Origin: Asterias rubens
Taxonomy: Eukaryota
Length of the DNA stretch: 64,000 nt
Direction: 5' to 3'
NCBI RefSeq assembly: GCF_902459465.1
Contig: NC_047071.1
Location: 7,626,001 to 7,690,000 of the forward strand
The notes under the pieces are model-generated. The model was not told the DNA's origin. It ran no database searches and saw only the letters and a program-made list of their open reading frames with translations. The translations under genes and the position numbers were made by a program. Below, one piece after another: positions 1 through 25,370 of the stretch. The number at the start of each line of letters is the position of its first letter. The first letter of the stretch is position 1.

Positions 1-1017
1 CTTGACAATCCGCAACACGTCGGATTTGGCCTACATGTATAGTTTGGTCTTTTTACAAAACTTAGCGAATGAAAGTATACGCATTTTGAAAGCTTGTTTA
101 ATGTGACCACGGAAAATCTGTTATAGAAAATCCTTGAACTTCAAATAACTTATATAACCAAATATGACACCTTTATTAATGAAGTCGCTCACACGAGTTC
201 AGTTTGCAAAGCCATTCCCAACAGACCAGGAAAACGTGTTTTAGGCAGCCACACAATGAATAACCAGACATAATCTACACTTTGGAATTTACTGATCAAA
301 ATGTCAAGTTGAAACCAACGCTTCTTTTCAGAACCATCCCAACTCATTTAGAGATAGTCATTACATGATGTTTCCGCAAACCTTTCCATATCGTATTTCC
401 ACCATGCAAAGTTTCAAATCCTAAATTCTAATTTGATATTGTTCGTTTAATACAGAAGTCCGTGTGTCACGGAAATGTCACTGTTCATAATGAATATGGG
501 GAACTGATGCTGTGCGTAAGACTAACCGTCCAAGTGAATGACGTCTAAATCACCAACAAGTCTCAGGCGAGAAGAACTACAGAACTTTCATATCATACAG
601 ATTGTCATCAAGACAGCTTTAGCTAGAAGGCTAGAATGAGAGCAAAATGAGAGATAAATTCACTTCATCATTGCACCCTTGCCCACCCCCCCCCCCAAAG
701 CTGGTGTGTTACAAATTGTTAAAGACACTTGACACTATTGGTAATTGTCAAAGACCAGTCTTACCACTTGGTGTATCTTAACAATACGCATACAATAACA
801 AACCTGTAAATATTTGCGCTCAATTGGTCGTCAAAAATGCGAGATATGAATGAAATAAACAACACCCTTCTCACACGAAGTTGTGTGCTTTCAGTTGCTT
901 GATTTCGAGGCCTCAAAATCTAATTCTGAGGTCTCGAAGCCAAATTCGTGAAAAATTACTTCAGAGGGAGCCGTTTCCCACAATGCTGTATATCAAAAGC
1001 TCTCCATTACTCGTTAC
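1..1017 (+). repeat. Copy 1 of a local tandem duplication (matches 7015-8097): last intron, last exon, 3' flank and MITE of an ML-domain gene
   Basis: Base 1 CTTGACAATCCGCAACACGTCGG recurs at 7015. Colinear high identity to about 1017/8097, with 36-nt and 51-nt segments missing in this copy. Confidence 0.95.
456..548 (+). CDS. Terminal exon of upstream ML-domain paralogue A (KSVCHGNVTVHNEYGELMLCVRLTVQVNDV*)
   Basis: Acceptor ttgttcgtttaatacAG at 454-455, open phase-0 frame to TAA 546-548. Four substitutions versus exon 7553-7645. Earlier exons lie outside the window. Confidence 0.7.
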   Translation, partial: KSVCHGNVTVHNEYGELMLCVRLTVQVNDV

Positions 1018-1127
1018 GACCGATTGAGCTCAAATTTTCACAGGTTTGTTATTTTATGCATATGTTGAGATACACTAAGTGAGAAGACTGGTCTTTGGCA
1101 ATTACTAATAGTGTCCAGTGTCTTTAA
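719..1127. mobile_element. Chimeric Kolobok/T2-like MITE (family A) with two left ends facing inward
   Basis: TTAA-AGACACTTGACACTATTGGTAATTG at 719 runs + to about 1017, then switches to the reverse complement of a left end finishing GTGTCCAGTGTCT-TTAA at 1127. Confidence 0.8.
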
Positions 1128-1194
1128 GGTACCCTTTTCGACTTCCCAACTAGCTGGAAAAATTGTTGGGATGGCGTCATGTTTTAGAAAAAAA

Positions 1195-1418
1195 CATTTG
1201 AAGTAAACGTAGTTTTTGAGTAGGAGGTATATATTATCACTCAACTATTATATAAGAAATGACTTCAGGCCTGAAGCATTTTATAAGGCATTTGATAGCT
1301 CACAATTTCTTTAATTGTTCTTTTACAACTTCGATGACCAATTGAACCCAAATTTTCACAGGCTTGTCTTTTTATGTATGTTGGGAAAAATCAATTTACC
1401 AAACGTATCCATGCTTTA
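1195..1418 (-). mobile_element. Diverged partial family A/C MITE
   Basis: GAAGTAAACGTAGTTTTTGAG and GATGACCAATTGAACCCAAATTTTCACAGG match the family core. Confidence 0.65.
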
Positions 1419-1782
1419 ACAAGTGTGTTTTATAAATGGGAAAACACTTTTCATGTTTTCATGATGAATAAATAAATATAATTTAATTAAAATTAATTTA
1501 ATCTAGTTTAATCTAATCTAATCGCTTGCGTAAGTATAAGAAAATATTCGTGTATGTAAGACAAACTATTCACATATAGAACAACACGTATTGCTATCGT
1601 TAAAGTACTCGTAAATTAATTGGTAATGTAACTTCCTAAAGTTGACAAGAGAGCAAATGATTATGGGCTTTATGTTTATCAAGCGTACGATAGTGAAACC
1701 ACGTATCGTTCGGCAGACAATGCATGATGCACACAGGGAATAATGAAAACAAATTCCCTAAATGTGGTTGCTTATTATTATG

Positions 1783-1809
1783 TTGTGCAATATTAGTGTG
1801 GAAAGTCCC
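1783..1809. promoter_or_regulatory. C/EBP-type site plus canonical NF-kB site in the proximal promoter of the ML-domain gene
   Basis: TTGTGCAAT at 1783-1791. GGAAAGTCCC at 1800-1809 is GGGACTTTCC on the minus strand, about 135 bp before ATG 1944. Confidence 0.6.
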
Positions 1810-1943
1810 ATTGAGAGAGTTTGACATTGAATGAAGCAACAAAAGGTGTTTACTCAAGCTCAGCAACATAAACTATGTTGGCAATACTAATAATACCACA
1901 CACACACGTCGATGAGAAGTTTAATACTTCGCGATAGTTCAAG

Positions 1944-2049
1944 ATGGGGAAAGGATCGACATTTTTGTTTTTCTGCTTTGCCGCTCTGTACGTGGTACCA
2001 AATGGTTCTCATGCTACAAAACAGTTGATACCCAAAATTACAAACTGTG
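1944..2049 (+). CDS. ML-domain gene B exon 1: signal peptide to first Cys (MGKGSTFLFFCFAALYVVPNGSHA-TKQLIPKITNC)
   Basis: aagATGG start context, hydrophobic core followed by small residues (GSHA), phase-1 donor G|GTGAGT at 2050. Confidence 0.8.
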
Positions 2050-2218
2050 GTGAGTTCATAAGTACATTGAATAGGATGTTGGTTTATTTTGTTTATAACA
2101 TAATTTGATTGTACCTTTTGTGCAAATCATGTTGAGGTCCTTCATTGATTTTCGCAATGCTGGTCGTAGTTTTATTGCCGAATACGGTTGTATCTGCTAA
2201 CTAGATAATCTAAGTTAG

Positions 2219-2605
2219 TTTAAAAGCACTGTTAGTAATTACTCAAAATAATTGTTAGCATTAAAACAAACTTACTTGGTTATAACGAGTAATGGAGAGC
2301 TGTTGATAGTATAAAACGTTGTGAGAAATGGCTCCCCCTGAAGTAACGTAGTAATGGAGAGCTGTTGATAGTATAAAACGTTGTGAGAAATGGCTCCCCC
2401 TGAAGTAACGTAGTTTTTCGAGAAAGCAATAATTTTCCAAGAATTGATTTAGAGACCTCAATATCAGATTTTGAGGTCTCGAAATCAAGCATAATGTATG
2501 ATAAGGGTGTTTTTTCCATTTTTCTCTCGCAACTTCAACGACCAAAATTGAGCTCATATTTTCACAGGTTTGTTATTTCATGCATATGTTGAGGTACACC
2601 AAGTG
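2219..2605 (-). mobile_element. Family A MITE, truncated, with an internal tandem duplication of about 55 bp
   Basis: GTAATGGAGAGCTGTTGATAGTATAAAACGTTGTGAGAAATGGCTCCCC-TGAAGTAACGTA occurs twice at about 2290-2412. Lies in ML intron 1. Confidence 0.85.
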
Positions 2606-3141
2606 GAGCCAACAATTATAGCCCGTTTTAGGTATGGCGGACTTAAACAATTATTCAGATTGGGTTTGGGTAAAATGTATCTTTGTATCCTCCCAAACCA
2701 ATAAGGGTACTCGTAAAGTGGCTGCCATACCTCAACAAGGCTCATGGGCGACCCTCTCAACCCATCTCCTAGTGTTTTCTGGGTACTGTGCTGTTGTTGT
2801 TGCTTTTGGGGTGGGGGGGAGCTAAAGAAATCTTCTGAAATGGCTTCATTTTCAGAATTTTTTGTGTATGATCACATTGCTTTTTCGGGGCTAGCATAAC
2901 AATGCAAAGGGAAACATATAAGCAGTCTTGTACCCTTTCACATTATTTGGATTGTAGCCTTTTGTCACAAATCGCAATTACTATCATAACAACACAACCG
3001 CCAGCTTTGCCCACACATAATGCTCTTTACTTTTGTATTCTCATTATTCGGTGGGTCATTTGGCATGCAGGGCACTTTTTTTTAAAAGAAATAACACAAT
3101 TATGGCAAACTCTATATTCACGTGGCTTTTCTCCCTTTTAG

Positions 3142-3228
3142 GCCCAGATTTCGAAGTGTGGTTTGAACCAGACCCAGTGTTGCTTATTAGTGGTTTGATG
3201 GCCAATGGTTCTCTTACCATGAAAGCAG
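3142..3228 (+). CDS. ML-domain gene B exon 2 (GPDFEVWFEPDPVLLISGLMANGSLTMKA)
   Basis: Strong acceptor cttttctcccttttAG. Phase 1-1, 87 nt. Donor is AG|GCAAGT (GC-AG intron). EPDP motif resembles GM2A LEPDPI. Confidence 0.75.
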
Positions 3229-3712
3229 GCAAGTACCTAGTTATTTCCTAATCAATAAATGCATAGCCAAACTTACTTAGTTATTAGGCCTACTATAATA
3301 GTCGGTAATAGAGATCACATCTGCTTGAAGATTGAATCTGCTTCAATTTGATTACACCTCCAAGCTGAAAAGCATGATGTAGGCTTAACAACCAGCTAGC
3401 TGTAAATCAACACCCAAAAACAACAAAAACAACAAAACAAAAACGAAGCCACACACTGTTGAAGCAGTTTAATGATTCAATCCGGATTCTATTCAAACTC
3501 AGTGTTGAACTCAATCTATGAAATCAATATCAAATTCGCATAAATTCAATCACGACTTGAAACGAATAATCGAAGCAGTGTACCAAAACACCATCAGCTT
3601 GTTCTTAATAATATATAATTTTGTATTATTTAAACAAAAACTCAATTCAATTCAATTTTATTTCAATTCACTGTTTTACAAAAGGGCCTCTTACGTGTAG
3701 AGGCATACAAAC

Positions 3713-3838
3713 CAAAGACTATAGAGCGCCGCAAGGCGCAAGATGCGGAACTGAAGCTTTATCTATTGTTGGAACGTGAAATACGCATGGGCGCCATTTC
3801 AGCAAGTGACTGTTTTGTTTCCCATTGATAGGAATGGT

Positions 3839-3874
<36 letters not shown>

Positions 3875-4142
3875 GACTTGTAATGCGCACATATCCACAC
3901 TGCTGGGTGTTCAAGGCGCAGTAAACCAAAAACAAAACAAAAACAAAACACAACACAAAGAAAAACAGACACAACAAAATTAGTCATTGAAAACCTGTGA
4001 CATAAGATAAGTTTTGTCTGCACTGATCTGCACAGGTCTATTGTTGTATCAAAATAGTTACTTGCCGAAATGGCGTCCAGTGGGATTTCACATTCCAGCC
4101 CGAGTTCCGCATATTGCGCCTTGCGGCGCTATATTATCTTTG
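3713..4142. mobile_element. Foldback MITE with about 100-bp imperfect TIRs enclosing a (TAA)n microsatellite
   Basis: CAAAGACTATAGAGCGCCGCAAGGCGCAAGATGCGGAACT is inverted to AGTTCCGCATATTGCGCCTTGCGGCGCTATATTATCTTTG. About 11 TAA units at 3841-3873. Confidence 0.8.
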
Positions 4143-5600
4143 ATACAAACTAACAACCAAGAAATAACTGTAAATAACTTAGGACATAATTCTAGGCAAA
4201 CCCAGATAAGCATGCTTCGTCTGGGTGTTCGTTAAGAAAGGAGATAAACACACTTATTAGTTGTTTCATCAGTCATGTTCAAAGCTTTCAGTTTAAAAGC
4301 AAACTTCAATTACGGCTGCTGACTTGGCAACAGCCTAGTGACCAACACAAGAGGGCGGTATAACAAGGAAGCCTTAAGTTAAGAACAGGATAGTGACACA
4401 AACAGAAACGGGAAGGACAGGAAACAAAAACACGGATACAGACGAGCAGAAAATAAACAAGTCAATAACGAAAACGTAATAATGAAATATGGGTTGAACG
4501 CCTTATATCATGATTCCATAATGGCACCTGGGTAAAGATTACTCTCAGACAATGTCCCATGGAGTGGGCGATGGATTTTGTTGAGGATCTAGTGTAGGGC
4601 TACTGTGATTACATGAACATGTAACAATAGAATTATATAGGATTTGAGTCATTGCATGGTGAGGTATCAATATACATTTTGTTTGCGGTAACACCATGTG
4701 TGTATCTACTTGCCAGGTAGAGTTGTTCTTAGAGAACTGTCTTGCTTTAATCTACTGCCGCGGAGTAGATAATCGGAGGCTCGGGAGACTTCTCAGTTCT
4801 GAAAAGAACTGTCCTGCTTTTAAACTATTACCGGGGCGGATGGTATAGAAAATAGACTGCACTACTACTTTAGCTTAGACGATCGTAACTAACTGTACTG
4901 CCGCGGAGTCAGTTCTGAATTTGTCTCAACGTTTCGACTAGCTTGCTCTAGTCATCGTCAGGACTATAACAACATAATTGAAAGATAGTTTTAGAGTGAT
5001 CCATGTAAGCAAAGAGAGATTTTGAGATCGAACAGATGGATTTCTGTTGAATGCCGATGTATATTTGAAAGTATGTACATACAAATACATGGTTTAATGT
5101 AGAAACGTTCGAATTACAGCAGCCCTGAGGCCTTTGTGTTACAAAATGTAAACAACCATATAAACGATTCAAATTACCAAGTATAGAAAGAACAATCAAG
5201 ATACGTAAAGAAGCCTCAAATTATTTAGCATTAATCTAGTCAAGTCAATTTTTGCTTGTGGTCGTTAACTTAATACAATTTTTAAGTTTATGTTAGAGTT
5301 TACTTCCGTGGACTATAATAACCTAAATCCTACCGAAATCGGCTAAAAGAACAAGGAAATGATTTAAAAAAACACCTCTACACTTCAGAAGGTTAACATT
5401 AACCTCAATAAAACTAACAAGAATAACCTGAAACTTAACCTCAGATCAGGAATGCTGTGCCACATGGCCCAATAATAATTTAGTAGCGAATAACATTGTG
5501 TTTTTGTTATGACTATATCCTCATTGTTCTTTTGTTTACATTATAGAGTAATGATCTTTATTGTGTTGATTCTCGTTTTCCTATGGTGATTTTGATACAG

Positions 5601-5726
5601 CTCATAGCATGTTGATGGGAACCATAGAAGCCCATCTTGACATATGGCCATACCATCTCAAATCTATCTACTGCGAAGATGGAACGACTACTATAGACCC
5701 TAAAGGATGTTATATGAAAAAGGGAG
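5601..5726 (+). CDS. ML-domain gene B exon 3 (AHSMLMGTIEAHLDIWPYHLKSIYCEDGTTTIDPKGCYMKKG)
   Basis: Acceptor ttttgatacAG, donor GAG|GTGAGT, phase 1-1, 126 nt, the only open frame. C-x11-C-x3-KG resembles the MD-1/MD-2 loop (C-x9-C-x3-KG). Confidence 0.8.
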
Positions 5727-5860
5727 GTGAGTAAATTACATGTGCACAGTTTTTAATAGACGCCAAGGCAGCAGACAAACTGGGCGGTGAATCTTCCGTT
5801 CTTCAACTTAGCTCGTTTTCCTGTGATGATATGAAATAGTTAGCCAATTCGCATATCGCT

Positions 5861-6252
5861 TTAAAGGCAGTGGACACTATTAGTAATTGCCAAAGACTAG
5901 CCTTCACAGTTGGTGTATGAACATGAACATTGGTGTATGAACATATGCATAACATAAATAATCTGTGAAAATTTGAGCTCAATCGGTCATCAAACTTGCG
6001 AGGTAATAATGAAAGAAGAAAACACCCTTGTCACACAAAGTTGTGTGCGTTTAGATGGTTGATTTCGAGACCTCAAGTTCTAAATCTGAGGTCTCGATAT
6101 TAAATTGGTGGAAAATTACTTCTTTCTCGAAAACTACGTCACTTCAGAGGGAGCCGTTTCTCACAATGTTTTATACCATCAACCTCTCCCCATTACTCGT
6201 CACCAAGAAAGGTTTTATGCTAATAATTATTTTGAGTAATTACCAATAGTGT
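5861..6252 (+). mobile_element. Family A MITE with right TIR clipped and fused to a second element
   Basis: TTAA-AGGCAGTGGACACTATT start, ends TACCAATAGTGTC. Confidence 0.9.
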
Positions 6253-6622
6253 CATTATACACTTTCGGAACAAAAAAAAGAAACAAATCACAGATTTACA
6301 AATAACTTACAGGGTTTACAGAAGGTAATGGTGAAAGACTTCTCTTGAAATATTATCCCATGAAATGCTCTTACTTTTTGAGAAAACATTAAAACAATTA
6401 TCAATTCTCGTTGTCGAGAATTACGGATTTATTTTAAACAGTACAGTCATTACACGGCGAAACGTGCGGAAACAAGGATGGGTTTTCCCGTTATTTTCTC
6501 CTGACTTCAATGACCGATTGAGCCTAAATTTTCACAGGTTTGTTATGTTATATACAAGTTGTGATACACGAAGTGTGGGCCTTTGGACAATACTGTTTAC
6601 CGAAAGTGTCCAATGGCTTTAA
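6253..6622. mobile_element. TTAA-flanked MITE of another family (F; TIR AGCCATTGGACACTTTCGG)
   Basis: Left (C)ATTATACACTTTCGG, right CCGAAAGTGTCCAATGGCT-TTAA. Shares the subterminal GACCGATTGAGC-AAATTTTCACAGGTTTG motif. Confidence 0.75.
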
Positions 6623-6828
6623 CAACGCTAAAAGCTGCTTTGATATTAACAATTGACAATTTGACTATTTCAATTGCTGGACAGGAAATCTTTTGTTAAT
6701 TTTTGTCTACTCATACAGAGATCAGAACACTTCGAAGTCGGCTTGCCCTAGATGAAAGTTTTGCTTCTCTTTTCACGGTAAACATTGTAACTTGTGTTTG
6801 TCAAAATGTGTCAATCTGCATATTTTAG

Positions 6829-6887
6829 CTTTCTTATTTAAGTATAGATGCAACAACAGGGTATTGAACAAGTATGTCGGTTTGGCT
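6829..6887 (+). CDS. ML-domain gene B exon 4 (AFLFKYRCNNRVLNKYVGLA)
   Basis: Acceptor gcatattttAG at 6827-6828, phase 1 in. Phase-0 donor GCT|GTGGGT restores the frame to the last exon. A competing donor G|GTAAAT lies 4 nt downstream. Confidence 0.6.
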
Positions 6888-7014
6888 GTGGGTAAATTTT
6901 TGAACCATACCACCCCATTCTACATTAAAACTGAATGTTAGGCCTGCAAAGTTAACTAATGAGCAGAACACAGCCACAAGGGAGTATAACAACGTGTTGG
7001 TCCTTTCAGATTCC

Positions 7015-8097
7015 CTTGACAATCCGCAACACGTCGGATTTGGCTACATGTATAGTTTGGTCTTTTTACAAAACTTAGCGAATGAAAGTATACGCATTTT
7101 GAAAGCTCCATGCGATTACGTGATGTAGCATTTTCAACAACCTTGTTTAATGTGACCACGGAAAATCTGTTATAGAAAATCCTTGAACTTCAAATAACTT
7201 ATATAACCAAATATGACACCTTAATAAAGTCGCTCACACGAGTTCAGTTTAGTCGAAACGGTTGGGATTTGTTTTTCAACAGTTTAAATGTGACGAAGAC
7301 TGCAAAGCCATTCCCCAATAGACCAGGAAAACGTGTTTTAGGCAGCCACACAATGAATAACCAGACATAATCTACACTTTGGAATTTACTAATCAAAACG
7401 TCGAGTTGAAACCAACGCTTCTTTTCAGAACCACCCCAACTCATTTAGAGATAGTCATTACATGGTGTTACCGCAAACCTTTCCATATCGTATTTCCACC
7501 ATGCAAAGTTTCAAATCCTAAATTCTAATTTGATATTGTTCGTTTAATACAGAAGTCCGTGTTTCACGGAAATGCCACTCTTCATAATGAATATGGGGAA
7601 CTGATGCTGTGCGGAAGACTAACCGTCCAAGTGAATGACGTCTAAATCACCAACAAGTCTCAGGCGAGAAGAACTACAGAACTTTCATATCATACAGATT
7701 GTCATCAAGACAGCTTTAGCTAGAAGGCTAGAATGAGAGCAAAATGAGAGATAAATTCACTTCATCATTGCACCCTTGCCCACCCCCCCCCCAAAACAAT
7801 GGTGTGTTACAAATTGTTAAAGACACTTGACACTATTGGTAATTGTCAAAGACCAGTCTTAACATACGCATACAATAACAAACCTGTAAATATTTGCGCT
7901 CAATTGGTCGTCAAAAATGCGAGATATGGATGAAATAAAAAACACCCTTCTCACACGAAGTTGTGTGCTTTCAGATGCTTGATTTCGAGGCCTCAAAATC
8001 TAATTCTGAGGTCTCGAAGCCAAATTCGTGAAAAATTACTTCAGAGGGAGCCGTTTCCCACAATGCTGTATATCAACAGCTCTCCATTACTTGTTAC
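7015..8097 (+). repeat. Copy 2 of the tandem duplication (matches 1-1017)
   Basis: Direct colinear match including the same MITE at the same site. Confidence 0.95.
7553..7645 (+). CDS. ML-domain gene B terminal exon (KSVFHGNATLHNEYGELMLCGRLTVQVNDV*)
   Basis: Acceptor ttgttcgtttaatacAG. The L-x-NE-x-GE-x-x-x-C-x-x-hydrophobic ending matches ML last strands (MD-1 LELYNENRATVAC). Total CDS 471 nt = 156 aa. Confidence 0.75.
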   Translation, partial: KSVFHGNATLHNEYGELMLCGRLTVQVNDV

Positions 8098-8159
8098 CAA
8101 GTAAGTTTTTATGCTAAAAACTATTGTGAGTAATTACCAATAGTGTCCACTGCCTTTAA
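7817..8159 (+). mobile_element. Family A MITE, both ends present
   Basis: TTAA...GACACTATTGGTAATT and AATTACCAATAGTGTCCACTGCCT-TTAA. Confidence 0.9.
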
Positions 8160-9335
8160 GTGGAAATGCTTAAACAGCTACCTGAGCGGAATGTTTTCAA
8201 CAGAAATTGTATTTTTACTTGTTTATAATGCACTTGTTTACCATTTTAATGTAATTTTGATATGTGTACACTTCTGAACTTTTCGTAATTATCGACTAAA
8301 AAATCAGGCCCCTGTCTAAAGGTTTTTTGGAAAACTAAAAACACTTCTGCCGTTGAGAGCGGGCGTCAAAGGACAATGCCGCTGACGTCATTTGTGGGAG
8401 TTTGCTTTGTTATACATCCACGCTGCAACAAAGCGGCTTTATCTACTTATGACGTTTTGAGAGTGATTACGTAACGGGGCTTTTCGCAAATCTCGCAGAA
8501 AAGCTCTGGACAAGGGCATACAAAAATATTGTTTTTTTACACAATTGAAACCTATTCGTAATCATATGACTAGATTTCCTTATTCATCGAAAACATTTTA
8601 AGTGGAATTCAGCAAAGTGCACGACTTGACATTTTCGTTCAAGCAGGTCTTTTAAAGAGAAGTATTTTCCCCTGAAAATGGGATCTATCCACTAACCCAA
8701 GGGTGACCCAGTAATTGGTTCTAAAAAACTAGACGCGTTTTGATTTTAGATTTTTTACGAATTGGACAAAAATGCAGACATTATAAATCTATTTCTGCAG
8801 GGTCAGAATTGAACCTGATTTCTAGTTCCAGATCCGTTTCAGGCAGGGTCAAGCTGGCCTGGAAAATGGAAAAAGGGATACCAACTCGGATTCCTTGTTA
8901 TTTTGGACAACTTTCTTGGTCATTTTGAGAAAGATTCTGATTGATACGGACACAGGTATAGGTCAAGCCCTACGGGACGTGGATCTGGGTAAATTTGGAC
9001 CATTGTTTTTAGAGTGTATGGAAACAATACGATATTGAATTTGGAACGAAAATTGGAGGGGGGGGGGGGGACACTTGTGTAAATTTTTTCCGATGACAAT
9101 AGTTTTGTAATTGTGTTCAAAGCATTTTCATTTCTATAATCTGTACACGAATGGTAAGCTTTTCCCGTACCGCAACAGGATTTCAGGCAACATGAACTAG
9201 TCTGGAAAAATCGTATCACTTGGTCCCCCCTCCTTAGATGGAACATCTGGTAAATAAACAGCGCAGATAATTTTCAAAAAAAGCTAATCGACGTGCGAGA
9301 AGAAAGGTCAGAGACAAATTCACATTGTAAAAGTT

Positions 9336-11460
9336 TTTAGGTGTTCGTGCATGTCAGCACGAACACCTATTGTTTTTGTTCCGTTTTTTTTTCTTCTCCA
9401 TCTTCTTCTTCTTCTTCACCATCAACTCTTCTCTACAGCATAACTCAAGATTCAAGCCAAACTGAACCTTGAAACTCATCAGACAATTGAACCTCAGTAC
9501 GAAGAGACGGCACAGTTTTCATTACGTCATGATGACGTCATTAGGTGTCAAATTACAAGGTTTTTAAAGTTGAAAAGGGACCATTTTCGTTTTGCTGTAT
9601 CTCAACGAATATGAAAGCTATGATGTTCAAAGTTTTCGCATCTGATAGACCAAGACTGGGGCAACATTTAAAAAGTTAATGCCAAAATCGTACGACCTTA
9701 GCATCCGGGTCGTTACCCTGGGTCGAAGTTCACCTTCGGGTTTTTTTCGTCAAAAAACAACTTTCGAGCTTTTCTACGGAATAACTCAAGATTGAGATTG
9801 AATGGAATGTTGAAACTCAACAGGTAGTTGAACCTCAGTATCAAGACAACACATATTTAATTACGTCATTATGACGTCATCGGGAATTGAATTACGTTAG
9901 ATCAAAGTTTAATATTTGTAAAAATCATAACTCAAAAACTATGATTCGGATTTTGACAATCTACACATCATCGGATAGATCATTAAAAGTTGGACAAATG
10001 TTTCACAGAACACGTAAAATATTTTTAATACTTCTAGTGCAAAACGAAAGTTGAAAATTTCATAAAATCTTATCGTATTCATGTTTTTAAAACTACTGAT
10101 CATTTCAACGTAATTTTTGTTTCAGATTGTAAAACAGCAATCCCGCTCAATCTTTTGCACAGAAATAACAAAATTTGGACCTTTACATCAGTCGAAAAGG
10201 GACGTCAAAGCACCTGTTGACCCACGCGTTTACCCCATTTTGATCAACAACGCACGCTATGTACGCTATGCAGTGCAAGCGCCGAGTTTTTTGGGGGGAA
10301 TTCCCAAAAGTGCTCTCTTTAGTCCAGCGAAAGAGGGCGCTGTAACGTTTTTAGTAACATCGAGCGCTGAGTGAATCGCGGTGAATCGCAATAGTTGAGT
10401 AATAATGAACAACGTCTCGCACCAAAACTACAAGTAGGAATACATTTGCATTGATGTTATAAGATACATTATACACCTTCAGATAGTCCATCACATAATT
10501 ATAAAATGTTTACAAGTCATACATCAGCTGAAAGGTTTTAATGAACTAGTCAGGATCTACACAAATGAAATCAGTTTAAACTTGGCTTCTTGTTCAAACG
10601 TACCAGAGGTTGAAAATAATTGGTCAAAGAAAAATAATTTCACAACCACACATTTGATTTTTTATATATTTATACGTCATTGGGTAGGTATGTAACAACT
10701 TAAGAAACGATACACAACATTGACTATTAAACCTTGACCTCCAGTTAAACAGGAAGATGCAGTTAATTATTTGAAAAAATATTACTCCAGAACCAGAAAT
10801 TAGTTGTTTATTATCTGAACGTCGTAAGATAAGGCTTTGAAAAATATTTACTAACGCTATAATTTGTGACCTGAAAAAATTGTCTTCCGGTTCAAACCGG
10901 ATGTTTAAATTTTATATTTGAAAAAAATCATAACATCTGAACCATACATTGGATTTTTTCAATCTATGCATCATCTGAAAGGTCTTAATAGACTTATCAC
11001 GTGCTATACAATATGCGACCCTGTTTGACCTTGACTTCCAGTTAAAGTTGGAAATTGATATATAATGTTTGAAAAATAAAAAAAAACCTAAACCACATGA
11101 TTTGATTTTTATCATCTATACGTCAAAAGAAAGAACTCAAAAGACATCACCAACGCTACCAAGTGCGACCTCATTTGACAGTACTTTCCGGTTCAAAACG
11201 GAAGTTGAAACTTTATATTTAAAAAATCATAACTTCTAAACCAAATATTGGATTTTTACAACCCATCCATCATTTAAAAAGTCTTAATAAACTTATCACG
11301 CGCTACATAAAAAGTAACCCCTATTTGACCTTTTATCCGATGCAAACCGGAAGTTGGTGTTTAATTTGTAAAAAAATCATAACTCCTTAACCAGTCATTG
11401 GATTGATGAGGTAAAATGTTGTCACCAATTCATTCACTCACTCACCACGAACACCTTGTT
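9336..11460 (+). mobile_element. Helentron-like non-autonomous element (HINE/DINE-1 architecture)
   Basis: T-run, then palindrome AGGTGTTCGTGC-6nt-GCACGAACACCT (9339-9368), (CTT)n tract, internal ~150-bp tandem units, (TCAC)n, and a 3' subTIR CACGAACACCT at 11446-11456 followed by T-run. Confidence 0.65.
10625..11400 (+). repeat. Degenerate ~148-150-bp tandem array (about 6 units) inside the HINE-like element
   Basis: AAAAATCATAAC-like anchors near 10630, 10773, 10923, 11071, 11222 and 11372. Confidence 0.7.
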
Positions 11461-11734
11461 TTTGTAGTAAACAAAAACTGTACATGTACCTCTATAGTTT
11501 TTTTTTTTTTTGTTTTTTTTTTACAAATACCGCGCAACATGAAGGCCTTTTACATTTTCCCGGAATTTACATTCCTCTCCCATAAAAGCGTCGACCAGAC
11601 CTAGCTGATGGGCTTGATTGCCTCACTGCCTGATGAACATCATCACGATTGATGACGAGGGGTTCAACATAAATCACAATGGTTGACTTTAGAAATCCAG
11701 GAACCAGCGGATTATTGTCATGCATACAGCGCCC

Positions 11735-11858
11735 TTTTCGAAACCACGGCTTGGCCCCGCGGTTGTTTTGAAAATTGCACGTGATTTGCGTATACGCGCT
11801 CTGAAGCTGATGTGGAGCCTGAAGCCGAAATCCAAAGCCGAAGCCGTGGTTTCGAAAA
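11735..11858. mobile_element. Small MITE with 18-bp TIRs, probably Harbinger-type
   Basis: TTTTCGAAACCACGGCTT and AAGCCGTGGTTTCGAAAA. Confidence 0.75.
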
Positions 11859-13159
11859 AGACCTTTTAGTTTCTGTATTTCTGAGCATGCGCACATAACT
11901 AAAAGCGATGGGCTTACCTCGTGAGTCTGCTGCCATCTGTAGTGTTACCCAAAGGTCTCACATTATGAAAAAAAAATATGTTCATTGCATTTTCCTAGTT
12001 TTTGTTAAAATATATGTGATCAATAATATTGAGTCAAGGATTGTAGACGTCCCCATACATGTAGAAATAACAAAACATTTTGTATCGTCTCAGAGACAAT
12101 GTTTGTTCTAACTTGACAGTTTAAAACTGATCCACGTAAAGTAAATAATACACATAGGATAAAGTCACAAAGTGCACGGAGAGACAACGTTTGAGTATTA
12201 CTGATACTGACGTGGTGACGTCACATACAGACGGCAGAAGCTCGGCTGTTTATACATGCAAATAATAACATTCAAATATTAGTGTCAGAAAAATTGGTAG
12301 TTCTTGTCAGCAGTGAGATGATTGCTTAATCGCGTCAGACTGACGACCTGATTACGGGAACGTCAAAACATGGCTGGTTATATTAGCGCGGCCGTATGGA
12401 CAGTATTTGATTCCTGTTTACACAGGCATGCGTTAGCGTTTGACCCATGCGGTCCTAGCTAAGGCGGCCCCCTTCAGATGTGCAGAGACCAGGGGTTTAT
12501 TAGTTTGGATTTCGCGGCTTTTCGCGCCAATTGTGCACTGCTTTGTAAACAGCCCAGGGGTTGCGTGGCGAGGGGACCGTACTCCGCTTAGACCATGCTG
12601 CCTCGGGGTGATGTCGAACGCGCTATTAATCATGGCACTTTCATTGCTTTTTTGTTTGAATGATTGCCGTCCCGTCTTCTACTCTAAACTGTTCAGTGAC
12701 TGTGTGGATCCCGTCATGTTGTCAGCCTATCCCCGCTTATGTATACATAAGACCAAGTTTCACTTTTAAGAGACAATACAGAATTATAAGAACAATATTT
12801 GACGAGTCTTTGGTGTTCTTGTCGTACATCTAGCTTCATGAAGCATAATAATAATATTGTAATTGTTGCTTTTCGCGTTTGTTAGTGAGTGTGGCATTTG
12901 TTGCAGTGCGCGTAGTTTATGTGTTTAGCGTGACTAACAAAACACTCGGTGTTGGTGTATTAGTAGTACTTATTAATCATTGATAAAGAAGACCAATAGG
13001 GCCTACCAATAATTACAAACAATCACAATAATGCACACTTCAATTCTAATGATTCGTAATAGACAAAGTGGTTTTCACTCGTTTTTCTTGCACTTTTCTG
13101 AGTCTCTCCTTTACTGGCATCATATCTAAAGAGTGGGCAAGAACTAAAACGAAAACGAT

Positions 13160-13234
13160 AAAAATGCACGCCCTCGATTGGTTGAATACGGAATACAGCC
13201 AAGCTTATTCAACCAATTGAGGGCGTGCATTTTT
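13160..13234. repeat. 29-bp inverted repeat with 17-nt loop (hairpin)
   Basis: AAAAATGCACGCCCTCGATTGGTTGAATA and TATTCAACCAATTGAGGGCGTGCATTTTT, one G:T pair. Confidence 0.9.
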
Positions 13235-14816
13235 AGCATTGTAGTTTTCGTTCTCGTTATCGGGGCCTGTCTGTGTACGAGTCAATTCCTTGGATACAGC
13301 GGACCAATCTATGTTTTAAACAATTCAGTGGGTGAACGACCTTGCCCTGACTACTCAAACTTTAGATTGAGTTTATCAAGCGTCCTCTCACAGAAAAAGT
13401 GGGGTTTTAAACTAAATTCATAGCCAGAGTATTAAAAGTGTACTCGGAGTCAAAACTATTGTATTTGTATTTCTAAAGAATGTTATTGTGTTCTTTTCAC
13501 AAAAGTTGAACAAACTATAGCGATTTTCTTTAACATTCATAACTTTTTTGAACGCTGAGATTTACCGATATATTTTCTTGAATGTTGTTAAGCATTGTTT
13601 GATTATTTACCCTTCATCCTTTATTATTTCGATAATGTTTGGGTGATCATTTGTGTTACCATCTTTTGATGCTTTCTGTATGTAATAAATGGTTAAAGGT
13701 CATTCTCTTTTGTATTTGTATGGATTTTTAAATCATGTTACCGGTGTATGCATCCTTGATTTGGGCTAGTCGGCCGCCATGTTTGCTTTTTAATACATAT
13801 AATATATATAATATCGTTTCTAATAGCCATTTTTAAGTGACAACAGCGCCCTCTATAAAGCAAATCGTTTGCTACAACCACTTCTCAATTGGTGGTTTCG
13901 GCTGTTGCTACGGCTAGATCACACAAAGACCTTTTTCTTCAAATCACATCTGGAGCCTACGGCAAATTACCATTTCTAAAGTTGCTGTATTTGGACACAA
14001 CTTCAAACTGTTGTAAATAGGCAAACTGTTCGTACTTAAACATACTCAATCTTGTCTGCAACTGTCAACGACCGACACAAATTGAAAGGAGTAAGCACGT
14101 CCTAACCAACAGAAAAGGTTTCAGAACTTACCACTGTCAAGCTAGAAGTGTTTTCCTGCCAAAAGTAGGACTATCTAACGTCTGTAAAATTGACGTCTCT
14201 TGATCACAGTAATGCGTTTGATAAATTAATAATAAATCTTATTTCAAAGGTTTTTTTCCATACGACATCAAGAGAGTGAAAGGAAGTCGCCAGTAGGCCT
14301 GTTTCGTTATATTGACACTCTCAAGCCGCTGGCTGAAAACTATAAAATAATGGATGGTTTTTTCTTCATGTTTTCTTGCCTAACAATACGTTGCCAAGGA
14401 AATACAACATTGTGTGGCAGGTATTTTCTACAGTGAGCCGGGGCTGTGCGGCTGATGTTGCTATACTTCACGGGTGAATGCTCACCCAGGGCAAGTGGTT
14501 AGACGGATCTGTGATAGGTGGTGGTAGCAGGGCGCCAATCCTGTCTATATTAATACAAAAGAGCCACTGACAGCACTGTTGAAGTTTTCAAGCTGACAAA
14601 AGCCTTTGGCAAATCTTCAAGATTTCTCTCTCAAATCGTTTTGATCATCTTTTTGTTTTCGTTTAGTTCAGAGAGTCTTTTATGGCAATCTCATGCGTCA
14701 ATGAATCCCAACATTAATCAGGAGACAGTTGAAGATCGTAAAAGGAAACAAGAAAAACGCACCAGGATGCGCTTCTGGGAAATAACAATCTCTTCTTTTT
14801 AAAGTGCAGTTATTAT

Positions 14817-15198
14817 TGAAGACAGTATGGACACTATTGGTAATAACTCAAATTAATTATTGACATAAAACCTTTTTTGGTGACGAGTAATGGGGAGAGG
14901 TTGAAAAACATTGTGAGAAACGGCTCCCTCTGAAGTGCCATAGTTTTCGAGAAAGAAGTAATTTTCCACGAATTTGATTTCGAGACCTCAGATTTAGAAC
15001 TTGAGGTCTCGAAATCAAGCATCTGATCAACGCACACAAATTTGTGTGACATGGGTGTTTTTTTCTTTCATTATTATCTCGCAAGTTCGATGATCGATTG
15101 AGGTCAAATTTTCACAGGTTTGTTATTTTATGTATTTGAGATACACCAACGGTGAAGGCTTGTCTTTTACAAATACCAATAGTGTCCATTGCCTTTAA
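14817..15198 (-). mobile_element. Family A MITE
   Basis: Both TIRs, central GATTTCGAGACCTCA hairpin, ends GTGTCCATTGCCT-TTAA. Confidence 0.9.
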
Positions 15199-15687
15199 GA
15201 AATGTGGAATTTTTTCAAGTATAGACATTATACAAGGGCTGACTTGGTTGCATTCTTCTCGGTCATGTCAATGTGATTCAAACCGAGGCGGGAATGACAA
15301 AGAGGACGTACCCACAATAAATTATTCCGGTAGGATTCGAACCCATGACCAACCATTCTTGTTCCAAATCCATGGCTCCTCTGAATTCTACTATTGATAA
15401 ATGTGAAAAAGACCAGTGATGGGGAATCACTTACTTCATTAAAACTCTAATAAGTAAACTTGTTGGGTCAAAGTAAAAGAAAAACACTTATCACTGCTTA
15501 TTGATGCAATCAAAATACACCAAAATATGAACATGGCAAAGTGGCTATTAAAGGCTTACTATACAGCATTCCAGTTTGTTCGTCTGGTACGTTTAACAAA
15601 CGTAGTGTTTATTGGTGTACTTTCCCCCTTAGCCGCAATTTGAATGCTCGAGCTTTTGAATAAAGACATTATAATGTTATCAACACT

Positions 15688-16005
15688 GAATGGACACTAT
15701 TGGTAATTACTCAAAATAATTGTTAGCTTAAAAACTTGCTTGGTAACGAGAAATTGAGAACTGCTGATAATAAACAATATTATGAGAAACGGCTCCCTCT
15801 GAAGAACGTAGTTTTTGAGAAAGATGTAATTTCACACTCAATTAATATACTTCAGGCCTGAAGCCTTTTATTATGCATCTTATAACACACAAATTAGTGC
15901 AACAAGGGAGTTTTTTTTAAATGCATTATTCTCTTGCAACTTCGATGACCAATTGAGTAAAAATGTTCACAGCTTTGACATACCAAAGGTGTCCAGAGCC
16001 TTTAA
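15688..16005 (-). mobile_element. Diverged family A/C MITE
   Basis: TGGACACTATTGGTAATTACTC ... GGTGTCCAGAGCCT-TTAA. Confidence 0.75.
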
Positions 16006-16014
16006 CAACTTTAC

Positions 16015-16142
16015 GAGAGCGGGGCTTGAACCTGCGACGAAGATATTGACAAAATAGAGAGACCGCTAACCAAGCTCTGATGGTTCAGTTGGTAGAGCGC
16101 TGGCATGTAAATTTGCAGGTCGCAGGTTAAAATCTCGCTCTC
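16015..16142. mobile_element. tRNA-derived SINE-like remnant with inverted B-box ends
   Basis: A-box TGGTTCAGTTGGTAGAGC at 16081. GTCGCAGGTTAAAATCTCGCTCTC (16119-16142) is inverted to GAGAGCGGGGCTTGAACCTGCGAC (16015-16038). Confidence 0.6.
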
Positions 16143-24599: not shown

Positions 24600-25370
24600 A
24601 TTCAATTGGATGACCACCCGCGTTTAGCCTGTCCTTTGCCGTCTAAGTGTAGCACCAGCCTCTCATCAGATATCCACTTGAAATAATTTCAATTCGAGAA
24701 AATTGTATTTTGTGGCCCTAAAACTTAATTCATTTCAATATATTTATTTCCATTCCATTGTGACCCTAACACTTAATTTATTTCATTTCATTTCAATATA
24801 TTTATTCTCATTCCAACAGGTCAAAATAACAACAATAAAGAACATTATTGAAGAGAGTTGGAAATGGGATCATAACCAGAAAATCCAAAGCTTGTGGGCA
24901 TGCCCAGTCAAACAAAACCGCAACGGACTAGCAATAGCAAGCATTAAACAAATATTAACCACTTCAGATGCCGCAATATATATATATATACAATGTATAT
25001 ACGTGTTCTATAGGGTTCAAACCCCTGATGGATTTATTCGTTTTTATGTTTGACATGTTCAGATGTTAGTTATAATGATGTGTAGGGTGGGACTGAGTTT
25101 ACTCCTCTGACAGAAATAGTTACTCATCTTCGACTTCCAAAACGACAGCTCTTGGGTTGATGTATGTGTATGTTAAATATTTTGAAGAGGTTCGAACAGT
25201 CTTGAAGATCAGTATTATATGTTTTAATCCTTGTTTAGGAGAGGCTTTTTTTAAATCTTTTCTGTATAAAAACTGAAACAACAATATCTGTGGTAATAAT
25301 ATGTTAATGTTAGTTTGACAATACCTTATGCCATTTCTGAGGTTTGCGCGTATTCAATAAAACAACATTA

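What the first reader, a model, noticed from the sequence alone, without database searches (positions are those of the whole stretch)
1944..7645. Hidden 5-exon secreted MD-2/MD-1-like (ML-domain) gene missed by the ORF track
Seen: exons 1944-2049, 3142-3228, 5601-5726, 6829-6887 and 7553-7645 join in phase (1,1,1,0) into 156 aa with a signal peptide, ITNCG-DFEV-x-EPDP, YC-x11-C-x3-KG, a terminal LHNEYGELMLC and two N-glycosylation sequons (N57, N133). Established: ML proteins (MD-2/LY96, MD-1/LY86, GM2A, NPC2) are about 150-190-aa beta-cups that bind lipids, and MD-2 presents LPS to TLR4. Inference: the length, the Cys loop followed by KG, and the LxNE end look closer to MD-1/MD-2 than to NPC2. 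A TLR co-receptor-like lipid sensor in an invertebrate deuterostome would be notable. Orthology is not established.
Basis: partly seen in the sequence, partly recalled or inferred. Interest (0 to 1): 0.85.

Follow-up and report, generated by a model that had tools for sequence, protein, structure and literature searches.

The report
Starfish secreted ML-domain gene, tandem duplicate

Summary
The window is Asterias rubens chromosome LR699101.1 (0 mismatches over 10.5 kb). The gene is RefSeq LOC117296139, listed as an uncharacterized protein, so it is not new to public annotation.

Exon 4 is wrong: it lies at 6719-6777, not 6829-6887 (both 59 nt). The corrected product is still 156 aa, with a signal peptide, four mature cysteines and sequons at N57 and N133. 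Intron 2 is GC-AG.

The gene is the downstream copy of a very young tandem pair. A. amurensis has four copies.

Relatives were found only in starfish. The Asterias proteins give no Pfam hit. Homologues at 35-40% identity from Patiria, Acanthaster and one unnamed transcript contig pass the ML-domain threshold (PF02221, up to 33 bits). Language-model features and fold searches also point to ML.

MD-1 ranks first or near first in every fold search. However, the models are poor (pLDDT 49 and 67), TM is at most 0.57 and Z is 7.3. There is no sequence match to any solved ML protein, and no tree could be built.

All 17 coding differences between the two A. rubens copies change an amino acid.

The spliced RNA contigs came from the paralogue or from A. 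amurensis genes. Spliced expression of this copy is unproven.

An earlier first-reader note on this same stretch of DNA (s1-172762, read in another window or again) had already flagged the tandem array.

The parts
456..548 (+). Last coding exon (with stop) of the upstream tandem paralogue LOC117295284
   Evidence: tblastn match at 81% identity. Exon threading of P0007 on L001 gives 14948-15040, which is window 456-548.
1509..1943 (+). 5' flank and presumed promoter, duplicated with the gene (98.6% identical to the paralogue's flank)
   Evidence: blastn of copy 2 against copy 1. Promoter function is inferred, not tested.
1944..2049 (+). Exon 1: start codon, signal peptide (residues 1-24, predicted cleavage after SHA) and Cys35
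   Evidence: Translation and GTGAGT donor. An in-frame stop lies upstream. The 2049|3142 junction is seen in RNA contigs of the paralogue and of A. amurensis genes. Missing from the RefSeq model P0008.
3102..3141 (+). Alternative coding start used by the RefSeq model XP_033634907.1, inside intron 1; it yields a 134-aa product without exon 1
   Evidence: The P0008 N-terminus equals the translation from ATG 3102. A copy-specific unspliced contig covers 2572-3183 in run X1.
3142..3228 (+). Exon 2, followed by a GC-AG intron (donor GCAAGT at 3229)
   Evidence: Joint 3225->5598 with 'both = 3' in runs X1, X3 and X5. The GC donor is conserved in all six Asterias genes.
5601..5726 (+). Exon 3: WPY motif and the Cys89-x11-Cys101-x3-KG loop
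   Evidence: Invariant columns of alignments A1 and A2.
6719..6777 (+). True exon 4 (59 nt, AG at 6717-6718, GT at 6778-6779); includes the hypervariable residues 112-115
   Evidence: Joints 5726->6744 and 6776->7552. Identical in P0008 and conserved in all family members. Paralogue comparison.
6829..6887 (+).
   Evidence: No joint uses it among those listed. It is absent from all homologous proteins. Its frame is broken by indels in the paralogue.
7553..7645 (+). Exon 5 with the N133 sequon, Cys146 and the TAA stop
7646..7939 (+). Probable 3' UTR up to the AATAAA at 7934
   Evidence: AATAAA found at 7934. The paralogue's mRNA contig aligns as far as 7831. The end point is inferred.

Best explanation
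Window 1944-7645 is Asterias rubens gene LOC117296139. It is the downstream copy of a very recent tandem duplication with a unit of about 6.6 kb.

When spliced through exons 1944-2049, 3142-3228, 5601-5726, 6719-6777 and 7553-7645, it encodes a 156-aa precursor. The precursor has a cleavable signal peptide and an approximately 132-aa mature domain. That domain has two cysteine pairs (35/146 and 89/101) and two conserved N-glycosylation sequons.

The protein belongs to a divergent branch of the ML (MD-2-related lipid-recognition, PF02221) family that was found here only in starfish.

The most likely mode of action is inferred from the family: a secreted beta-sandwich cup that takes a lipid or other hydrophobic ligand into its core.

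The gene family is expanding (two copies in A. rubens, four in A. amurensis), and its recent changes are almost all amino-acid replacements. This suits a recognition or ligand-diversifying role such as microbial lipid sensing, but that step is inference.
For: Identity of the locus:
- Window 1-10548 equals L001 with 0 mismatches.
- Exons 2-5 are identical to XP_033634907.1.

Gene structure:
- Splice signals are proper.
- RNA joints are seen at 2049|3142, 3228|5601 and 6777|7553, and exon 4 letters follow exon 3.
- The same five-exon GT/GC/GT/GT structure threads exactly in five other Asterias genes.

Family:
- Homologues were found only in Asterias, Patiria, Acanthaster and two unnamed starfish-like records.
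- PF02221 is reached above threshold by P0004 (30.2 bits), P0005 (24.5), P0013 (24.1), P0014 (33.2), P0015 (32.0) and P0016 (28.1), covering nearly the whole HMM.
- Language-model neighbours are ML clusters at 0.95-0.96.
- The Foldseek hits at E<=0.001 for both models are almost all MD-1, MD-2, NPC2 or GM2A, with the mite allergens just below that cut.

Conservation:
- C89, C101, WP (80-81), KGE (105-107) and R109 are invariant across the family. C35 and N57 are nearly invariant, and C146 is invariant among the nine sequences of A1.

Diversification:
- The two A. rubens copies differ at 17 coding sites, all nonsynonymous.
- Pairwise dN/dS among the six Asterias genes is 0.97-4.5, against 0.36-0.42 to the outgroup P0017.
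Against: - The Asterias proteins themselves do not hit Pfam ML at all, so membership rests on transitive homology and on low-confidence models.
- No solved ML protein is matched by sequence or by family profile.
- The AF2 model of the Asterias protein has pLDDT 48.9. The best VIA Z is 7.3, close to unrelated beta-sandwiches at 6-6.7.
- No spliced contig specific to this copy was seen. The spliced X1 contig carries the paralogue's letters, and X3 and X5 carry A. amurensis letters. The only copy-specific contigs are unspliced. No organism A RNA(?) run from the first run search, such as X1 or X2, was listed as holding this copy's last-exon words.
- dN/dS above 1 is only marginally significant across the six genes (P 0.02-0.12), and it also fits relaxed constraint.
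- Ligand binding was not tested.
Confidence: 0.75

Rival explanations
1. The starfish family is the echinoderm counterpart (orthologue or sister group) of vertebrate MD-1/MD-2. It would act as a lipid-presenting co-receptor bound to the ectodomain of a Toll-like receptor.
For: - MD-1 is the top PDB hit for both models, followed by MD-2 and then NPC2.
- Human LY86 is rank 1 in AFDB Swiss-Prot for the better model, and mouse LY86 is rank 3 for the other model.
- Human MD-1 is the top VIA hit at Z 7.3.
- A chordate LY86 cluster is row 1 of the Atlas shape search.
- Structural-alignment identity is 14-21% to MD-1/MD-2 against 11-17% to NPC2.
- The 11-residue Cys loop followed by KG is long, as I recall it being in MD-1/MD-2 (from memory, not tested).
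Against: - The models are low confidence (pLDDT 49 and 67).
- TM 0.37-0.57 does not separate MD from NPC2 or from Dictyostelium ML proteins, which interleave in the ranking.
- Z 7.3 is at the tool's noise level.
- No MD-1 or MD-2 chain is found by sequence or by profile at E<=10.
- Feature search lists arthropod ML, plant/Dictyostelium PG/PI-transfer and chordate NPC2 clusters as its top three and shows no LY86/LY96 cluster.
- The mature protein has only four cysteines, so the additional disulfide that I recall in MD-1/MD-2 has no counterpart.
- No tree, no synteny and no receptor evidence.
Confidence: 0.13
2. This particular copy is a young duplicate that is losing function or changing it. 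It would be poorly spliced or transcribed from inside intron 1, giving a product without the signal peptide and Cys35. The working gene would then be the upstream paralogue.
For: - The RefSeq model starts at ATG 3102 and lacks exon 1.
- The only contigs that carry this copy's own letters are unspliced: 2014-2162, 2572-3183 and 3154-3525.
- In run X1, every contig over exons 3 and 5 carries the paralogue's variants.
- No organism A RNA(?) run from the first run search was listed for this copy's last exon.
- All 17 differences from the paralogue are replacements, with no synonymous change.
Against: - The ORF, all four splice-site pairs, the signal peptide, the four cysteines and both sequons are intact.
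- The proximal 435 nt upstream are 98.6% identical to the expressed paralogue's.
- Logan contigs drop minor variants, so absence proves nothing (tool note).
- 0 synonymous out of 17 differences is unlikely under pure neutrality. The probability is about 0.01 as 0.77^17, using the neutral nonsynonymous fraction (my arithmetic).
Confidence: 0.2
3. It is a generic NPC2-like sterol or lipid carrier, or a carrier of hydrophobic signals or starfish steroid glycosides. It would have no pattern-recognition role.
For: - It belongs to the ML family, whose commonest metazoan members are NPC2-like.
- A chordate NPC2 cluster is rank 3 by features for the Patiria member.
- NPC2 is among the significant fold hits.
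Against: - NPC2 consistently ranks below MD-1/MD-2 in the fold searches.
- The six-cysteine pattern that I recall for NPC2 and Der p 2 is not present, since there are four cysteines.
- Housekeeping NPC2 genes are normally single-copy and conserved, whereas this family is lineage-specific, tandemly expanding and fast-evolving.
Confidence: 0.2

Closest known systems
ML domain family (Pfam PF02221, E1_DerP2_DerF2; MD-2-related lipid-recognition)
   Same: It is a single-domain secreted protein of about 130 mature residues and is beta-rich. It has an N-terminal and a C-terminal cysteine plus a central Cys loop. Starfish homologues pass the Pfam threshold over nearly the full HMM. Fold and feature searches return ML proteins.
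   Different: The Asterias members are too divergent for a direct Pfam hit. The mature domain has only four cysteines. The branch was found only in starfish and is tandemly expanding.
Vertebrate MD-1 (LY86) and MD-2 (LY96)
   Same: These are the best-ranked structural neighbours in all fold searches. They are of similar length (about 160-aa precursors). They have a long Cys loop followed by KG (recalled, not tested).
   Different: There is no sequence-level match. TM is at most 0.57 on poor models. The extra disulfide I recall in MD-1/MD-2 has no counterpart. Orthology, a TLR4/RP105-type partner and LPS binding are all untested.
NPC2 and fungal/Dictyostelium PG/PI transfer proteins
   Same: They share the same fold family. 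The Dictyostelium and fungal members interleave with LY86 and LY96 in the AFDB ranking. A chordate NPC2 cluster is rank 3 by features.
   Different: Metazoan NPC2 scores one to two orders of magnitude worse than MD-1 in Foldseek E-value. The cysteine pattern differs. NPC2 is a conserved housekeeping gene, not a fast-evolving array.
Arthropod ML / MD-2-like proteins that bind LPS or work with Toll receptors (for example shrimp PvML1, PMC9832027; Spodoptera MD-like protein with Toll5, PMC11536157)
   Same: They are invertebrate secreted ML proteins from lineage-specific multi-gene families, with a proposed role in microbial lipid recognition. An arthropod ML cluster is the top feature hit for the Patiria member.
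   Different: No functional data exist for any starfish member. No paper in the library mentions these loci. Only the titles and abstracts of these two papers were seen.

Membership tests
ML domain (PF02221) | The protein itself scores above the Pfam gathering threshold | tested here: not met
   P0008 (this gene, exons 2-5), P0007, P0002, P0012 and P0017 give no family at E<=10. The single exon peptides also give no hit.
ML domain (PF02221) | Clear homologues score above the threshold (transitive membership) | tested here: met
   P0014 scores 33.2 bits, P0015 32.0, P0004 30.2, P0016 28.1, P0005 24.5 and P0013 24.1, against a cut-off of 22.7, covering HMM positions 3-132 of 133. These proteins are 35-43% identical to the Asterias proteins and are recovered by the family profile at E 1e-44 to 1e-70.
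ML domain (PF02221) | Secreted single domain of about 130 residues with a signal peptide | tested here: met
   The 156-aa precursor has a hydrophobic core at residues 7-18 and small residues at -3 and -1 (S-H-A) before T25 (read from the sequence). No SignalP run was available.
ML domain (PF02221) | Conserved cysteines able to tie the N- and C-terminal strands and to close a central loop | tested here: met
   C89 and C101 are invariant, C35 is nearly invariant, and C146 is invariant in A1. The pairing itself is inferred from the family, not observed.
ML domain (PF02221) | Ig-like beta-sandwich fold matching solved ML proteins | tested here: inconclusive
   The significant Foldseek hits are almost all ML proteins (E down to 4e-6, TM 0.37-0.57). 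The models have pLDDT 48.9 and 66.9, and the top VIA Z is 7.3.
ML domain (PF02221) | Binds a lipid or sterol in the hydrophobic core | not testable with these tools
   This needs recombinant protein and binding assays.
MD-1/MD-2 (LY86/LY96) subfamily | Groups with LY86/LY96 in an ML-family phylogeny or in subfamily profile scoring | not tested
MD-1/MD-2 (LY86/LY96) subfamily | Detectable sequence similarity to MD-1 or MD-2 | tested here: not met
   phmmer and profile searches of all PDB chains, which include many MD-1 and MD-2 entries, give no ML hit at E<=10.
MD-1/MD-2 (LY86/LY96) subfamily | MD-1/MD-2 are the nearest structures by a clear margin | tested here: inconclusive
   They rank first in five searches. 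The margins are small, Dictyostelium ML proteins interleave, and the models are poor.
MD-1/MD-2 (LY86/LY96) subfamily | Three disulfides, including the extra pair near the cup bottom (recalled from the MD-2 and MD-1 crystal structures) | tested here: not met
   The mature protein has only four cysteines (35, 89, 101, 146). The defining pattern is from memory and was not checked here.
MD-1/MD-2 (LY86/LY96) subfamily | Forms a complex with a TLR4/RP105-type leucine-rich-repeat ectodomain | not testable with these tools
   This needs pull-down or co-expression experiments.
NPC2 | Six-cysteine pattern and sequence similarity to NPC2 | tested here: not met
   There are four cysteines. No NPC2 chain is hit by sequence. 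NPC2 appears only as a lower-ranked fold hit. The six-cysteine pattern is from memory.

The most novel reading that the evidence does not exclude
Starfish carry a lineage-specific, tandemly expanding and positively selected clade of ML proteins that is the sister of vertebrate MD-1/MD-2. These proteins would act as soluble lipid-presenting co-receptors for members of the large echinoderm TLR repertoire. That would put the origin of the TLR/MD partnership before the split of echinoderms and chordates.
Probability: 0.1. Interest if true: 0.75.

Novelty: new member of a known kind. Interest (0 to 1): 0.33.

Why it matters
MD-2 and MD-1 are known as vertebrate partners of TLR4 and RP105. One review in the library reports that MD-2 could not be found even in the fish genomes sequenced at the time (PMC6043800).

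Echinoderms have very large TLR repertoires with unknown ligands and unknown co-receptors (my own knowledge). A secreted, fast-diversifying ML family in starfish is a reasonable candidate for a lipid-recognition accessory and is easy to test.

As it stands, the finding has three practical uses:
- It corrects a gene model.
- It assigns two 'uncharacterized' Asterias loci to the ML family.
- It documents a very young duplicate pair whose coding differences are all amino-acid replacements.

None of this is a surprise for a specialist. UniProt already labels the Patiria homologues as MD-2-related lipid-recognition domain proteins.

Tried and rejected
- **Pfam on single exon peptides:** no hits.
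- **Pfam on full Asterias proteins:** no hits.
- **Sequence and profile searches of PDB chains:** only chance hits, namely O-mannose kinase, inositol monophosphatase and a Pru ar allergen, at E of 0.2 and above.
- **Representative-library search with exon 3:** besides true relatives, it returned three low-complexity repeat proteins (P0001, P0003, P0006), which I set aside as spurious.
rejected. Its peptide is unlike the true exon 4, no listed joint uses it, and indels break its frame in the paralogue.
- **Using the X1 spliced contig as proof that this copy is expressed:** rejected, because the contig carries the paralogue's diagnostic letters.
- **Synteny with LY86/LY96:** the upstream neighbour is a protein kinase on the other strand. 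Downstream ORFs gave only sub-threshold Pfam hits. No conclusion.
- **Literature:** no paper names these loci, and none links ML proteins with echinoderms beyond a passing mention.
- a tree with LY86, LY96, NPC2 and GM2A could not be built for lack of tool-given sequences. The full 156-aa spliced protein has no reference, so I did not submit it to tools. I used P0008 (identical over exons 2-5) and P0002 and P0007 (90% identical) as proxies.

Full report
**What is in the sequence**

Four of them are right.

- Exon 1 (1944-2049) begins at an ATG that is preceded by an in-frame stop, and it ends at a GTGAGT donor.
- Exon 3 (5601-5726) and exon 5 (7553-7645) have canonical splice sites.

Laying Logan contigs of four runs on window 1860-7850 gave three relevant joints:

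- 2048->3141 (cut +1, GT..AG);
- 3225->5598 with three ambiguous letters, which is 3228|5601 (GC..AG);
- 6776->7552 (cut +1, GT..AG).

In run X1 there was also a joint from 5726 to 6744 with 25 intervening letters. Those letters are a diverged version of 6719-6743.

The transcribed exon 4 is therefore 6719-6777 (AG at 6717-6718, GT at 6778-6779), not 6829-6887. The peptide of residues 107-126 changes, and the odd fifth mature cysteine disappears.

**Independent support for the corrected exon 4**

A search of the representative library with the exon 3 peptide returned a 156-aa Asterias amurensis protein (P0002). It carries the peptide of 6719-6777.

The corrected model is 141/156 identical to P0002 and to A. 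rubens P0007.

P0008 (XP_033634907.1, LOC117296139, 134 aa) is identical to the corrected model over exons 2-5. Its first 13 residues come from an ATG at window 3102, inside intron 1.

The family alignment shows that the true exon 4 is conserved as KGE-x-R ... D-[DEG]-[SN]-F.

**Where the window comes from, and the neighbourhood**

The locus fetched for P0007 (L001: GCA_902459465.3, LR699101.1, Asterias rubens) overlaps window 1-10548 with no mismatch.

L001 holds two family genes in tandem. These are LOC117295284 (P0007), which ends at window 548, and this gene. Upstream of the pair lies a protein kinase gene on the other strand.

The duplicated unit runs from window 1509 to 8097. It is 95-98.6% identical to the first copy over most of its length, falling to 89% in the 3' segment, and the introns are as alike as the exons. 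The duplication is therefore very recent.

A. amurensis has four tandem copies on CP134960.1.

All six Asterias genes thread exactly through the same five exons, with a GC-AG second intron.

This agrees with the scan's earlier first-reader note on this same stretch, read in another window or again (s1-172762: tandem ML array with a unit of about 7 kb ending here). In A. rubens, however, the 'array' is only a pair.

**Is this copy expressed?**

This is not settled.

- The spliced X1 contig (537 nt, depth about 1034) carries G at 5693, T at 7614 and the paralogue's version of exon 4. It is therefore LOC117295284 mRNA.
- The X3 and X5 contigs carry G at 1965 and C at 1971, as in the A. amurensis genes.
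- The contigs that match this copy and not the paralogue are unspliced. They are 2572-3183 (0 differences against at least 10 for the paralogue), 3154-3525 (1 against 9) and 2014-2162 (0 against 1).
- This pattern fits the RefSeq model, which starts inside intron 1.
- A second run search with this copy's last exon listed mainly DNA runs. It listed no organism A RNA(?) run from the first search, such as X1 or X2.

Logan contigs drop minor variants, so this is absence of evidence only. The junction evidence therefore validates the exon structure through the paralogue and the orthologues, not spliced expression of this copy.

**What the protein is**

Sequence searches found relatives only in starfish: Asterias, Patiria miniata, Acanthaster planci, one Logan contig (P0004) and P0017.

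The Asterias proteins, and also P0017, have no Pfam hit even at E<=10.

The Patiria, Acanthaster and Logan members are 35-43% identical to the Asterias proteins. They score 24-33 bits on PF02221 (ML domain), above the 22.7-bit cut-off, and cover nearly the whole model. Seven of 14 family members match at E<=1, five of them above the cut-off. UniProt already names the Patiria proteins 'MD-2-related lipid-recognition domain-containing'.

The ESM Atlas feature search places 67-68 of the 100 nearest clusters in PF02221, at scores of 0.95-0.96.

No solved ML protein is hit by sequence or by the family profile.

Invariant or nearly invariant positions include C35, G36-P37, N57, W80-P81, Y88-C89, K99-G100-C101, K105-G106-E107 and R109. 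C146 is invariant among the nine sequences of A1.

I conclude that this is a divergent, starfish-restricted branch of the ML family. The Asterias members lie beyond direct HMM reach.

**MD-1/MD-2-like or not?**

Two AlphaFold2 models were made with the shallow 14-sequence family alignment. The A. amurensis protein P0002 gave pLDDT 48.9. Mature Patiria P0014 gave pLDDT 66.9.

| Search | Model | Result |
|---|---|---|
| Foldseek, PDB | P0002 | MD-1 first (E 4e-6, TM 0.52-0.57, 14-20% identity), then MD-2, NPC2 (E 1.5e-4), GM2A, Der f 2 / Der p 2 |
| Foldseek, PDB | P0014 | Same order, but TM only 0.37-0.45 |
| Foldseek, AFDB Swiss-Prot | P0014 | Human LY86 rank 1 |
| Foldseek, AFDB Swiss-Prot | P0002 | Mouse LY86 rank 3 |
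| VIA-align, PDB | P0014 | Human MD-1 at Z 7.3, unrelated beta-sandwiches at 6.0-6.7, no NPC2 in the top 50 |
| Atlas shape search | P0014 | A chordate LY86 cluster in row 1, at TM 0.42 |

In both AFDB searches, Dictyostelium and fungal PG/PI-transfer proteins interleave with LY86 and LY96. Metazoan NPC2 lies one to two orders of magnitude lower in E-value.

The lean towards MD-1 is consistent but weak. It rests on poor models, on TM-scores that do not discriminate, and on a Z-score at the tool's stated noise level.

The feature search of P0014 lists arthropod ML, PG/PI-transfer and chordate NPC2 clusters as its top three, and no LY86/LY96 cluster among the rows shown.

The four-cysteine mature domain has no counterpart of the additional disulfide that I recall in MD-1/MD-2, nor of the hairpin disulfide of NPC2 and Der p 2. 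Both of those patterns are from memory.

A phylogeny could not be built, because no tool returned LY86, LY96 or NPC2 sequences. I put the MD-1/MD-2 sister or orthologue reading at about 0.1-0.15.

**Evolutionary pattern**

The two A. rubens coding sequences differ at 17 nucleotides in 15 codons. All 17 changes are nonsynonymous. Seven of them cluster in codons 112-115. The introns, by comparison, differ by about 5%.

Taking a neutral nonsynonymous fraction of about 0.77, 0 synonymous changes out of 17 has a probability of about 0.01. This is my own arithmetic, and the clustered changes may not be independent.

Across the six Asterias genes, pairwise dN/dS is 0.97-4.5. Against the more distant P0017 (dS about 0.7) it is 0.36-0.42.

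Counting segregating changes gives 48 nonsynonymous to 9 synonymous, with P between 0.02 and 0.12 depending on the transition bias assumed.

All copies keep intact ORFs, splice sites, signal peptides and cysteines. This fits recent diversifying selection on a constrained scaffold, but relaxed constraint cannot be excluded.

**How it most likely works**

- Shown: an intact gene for a signal-peptide-bearing, cysteine-stabilised, N-glycosylatable domain of about 132 aa that is homologous to ML domains.
- Inferred from the family: it folds into a beta-cup and takes a lipid or other hydrophobic ligand into its core after secretion.
- Further inference: copy-number change and replacement-biased divergence point to a recognition role. 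This could be microbial lipids, as for arthropod ML proteins (PMC9832027 and PMC11536157, titles and abstracts only), or it could be diversification of endogenous ligands.
- Entirely untested: partnership with a TLR.

**Verdict**

This is a real gene of a known kind. The ML assignment is well supported. The MD-1/MD-2 kinship is a weak lead, and spliced expression of this copy is unproven.

Noticed in passing
window 1944-7645 versus L001 10001-15040: All 17 nucleotide differences between the coding sequences of the two A. rubens tandem copies are nonsynonymous. Seven of them are packed into codons 112-115 (GFWT versus RSRL). This could be a multi-nucleotide event or a small gene conversion.
   Followed up: partly
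window 3102-3228: The RefSeq protein XP_033634907.1 starts at an ATG inside intron 1, so it lacks the signal peptide and Cys35. Copy-specific unspliced contigs in run X1 cover 2572-3525. This suggests either an internal transcription start or retained introns for this copy.
   Followed up: partly
L006 1855-2325: The 59%-identical family member P0017 is encoded as one uninterrupted 471-nt ORF on a 5.4-kb contig of GCA_014845345.1. It could be a retrocopy or a cDNA-derived contig. L006 3448-4497 also matches window 11867-12908 at 86% over 1 kb.
   Followed up: partly
window 2219-2605, 4460-5060, 5861-6622 and 7260-7850: These intronic and 3'-flank stretches have contig depths of 10^4 to 10^6 in the RNA-labelled runs, with many joints and loose ends. 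They are dispersed repeats, probably transcribed SINE- or MITE-like elements. A 58-nt unit is directly duplicated at about 2290-2405.
   Followed up: no
window 7070-7246: A marine metatranscriptome run (X7) holds a 177-nt contig identical to this copy's intron 4. Starfish nucleic acid is therefore present in an environmental sample.
   Followed up: no
L002-L005 (A. amurensis CP134960.1, about 14.20-14.25 Mb): A. amurensis has four tandem copies, against two in A. rubens. In two of the copies the second intron has grown to about 6.6-7 kb.
   Followed up: partly
window 24703-25053: An ORF with a sub-threshold match to the EIPR1 beta-propeller (18 bits against a cut-off of 54). It may be an exon of a neighbouring gene.
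   Followed up: no
window 1860-2059: Summed contig depth over exon 1 and the 5' flank in run X1 (5,000-18,000) is far higher than over exons 3-5 (about 1,000). The 5' end may be shared with other transcripts or with a repeat.
   Followed up: no
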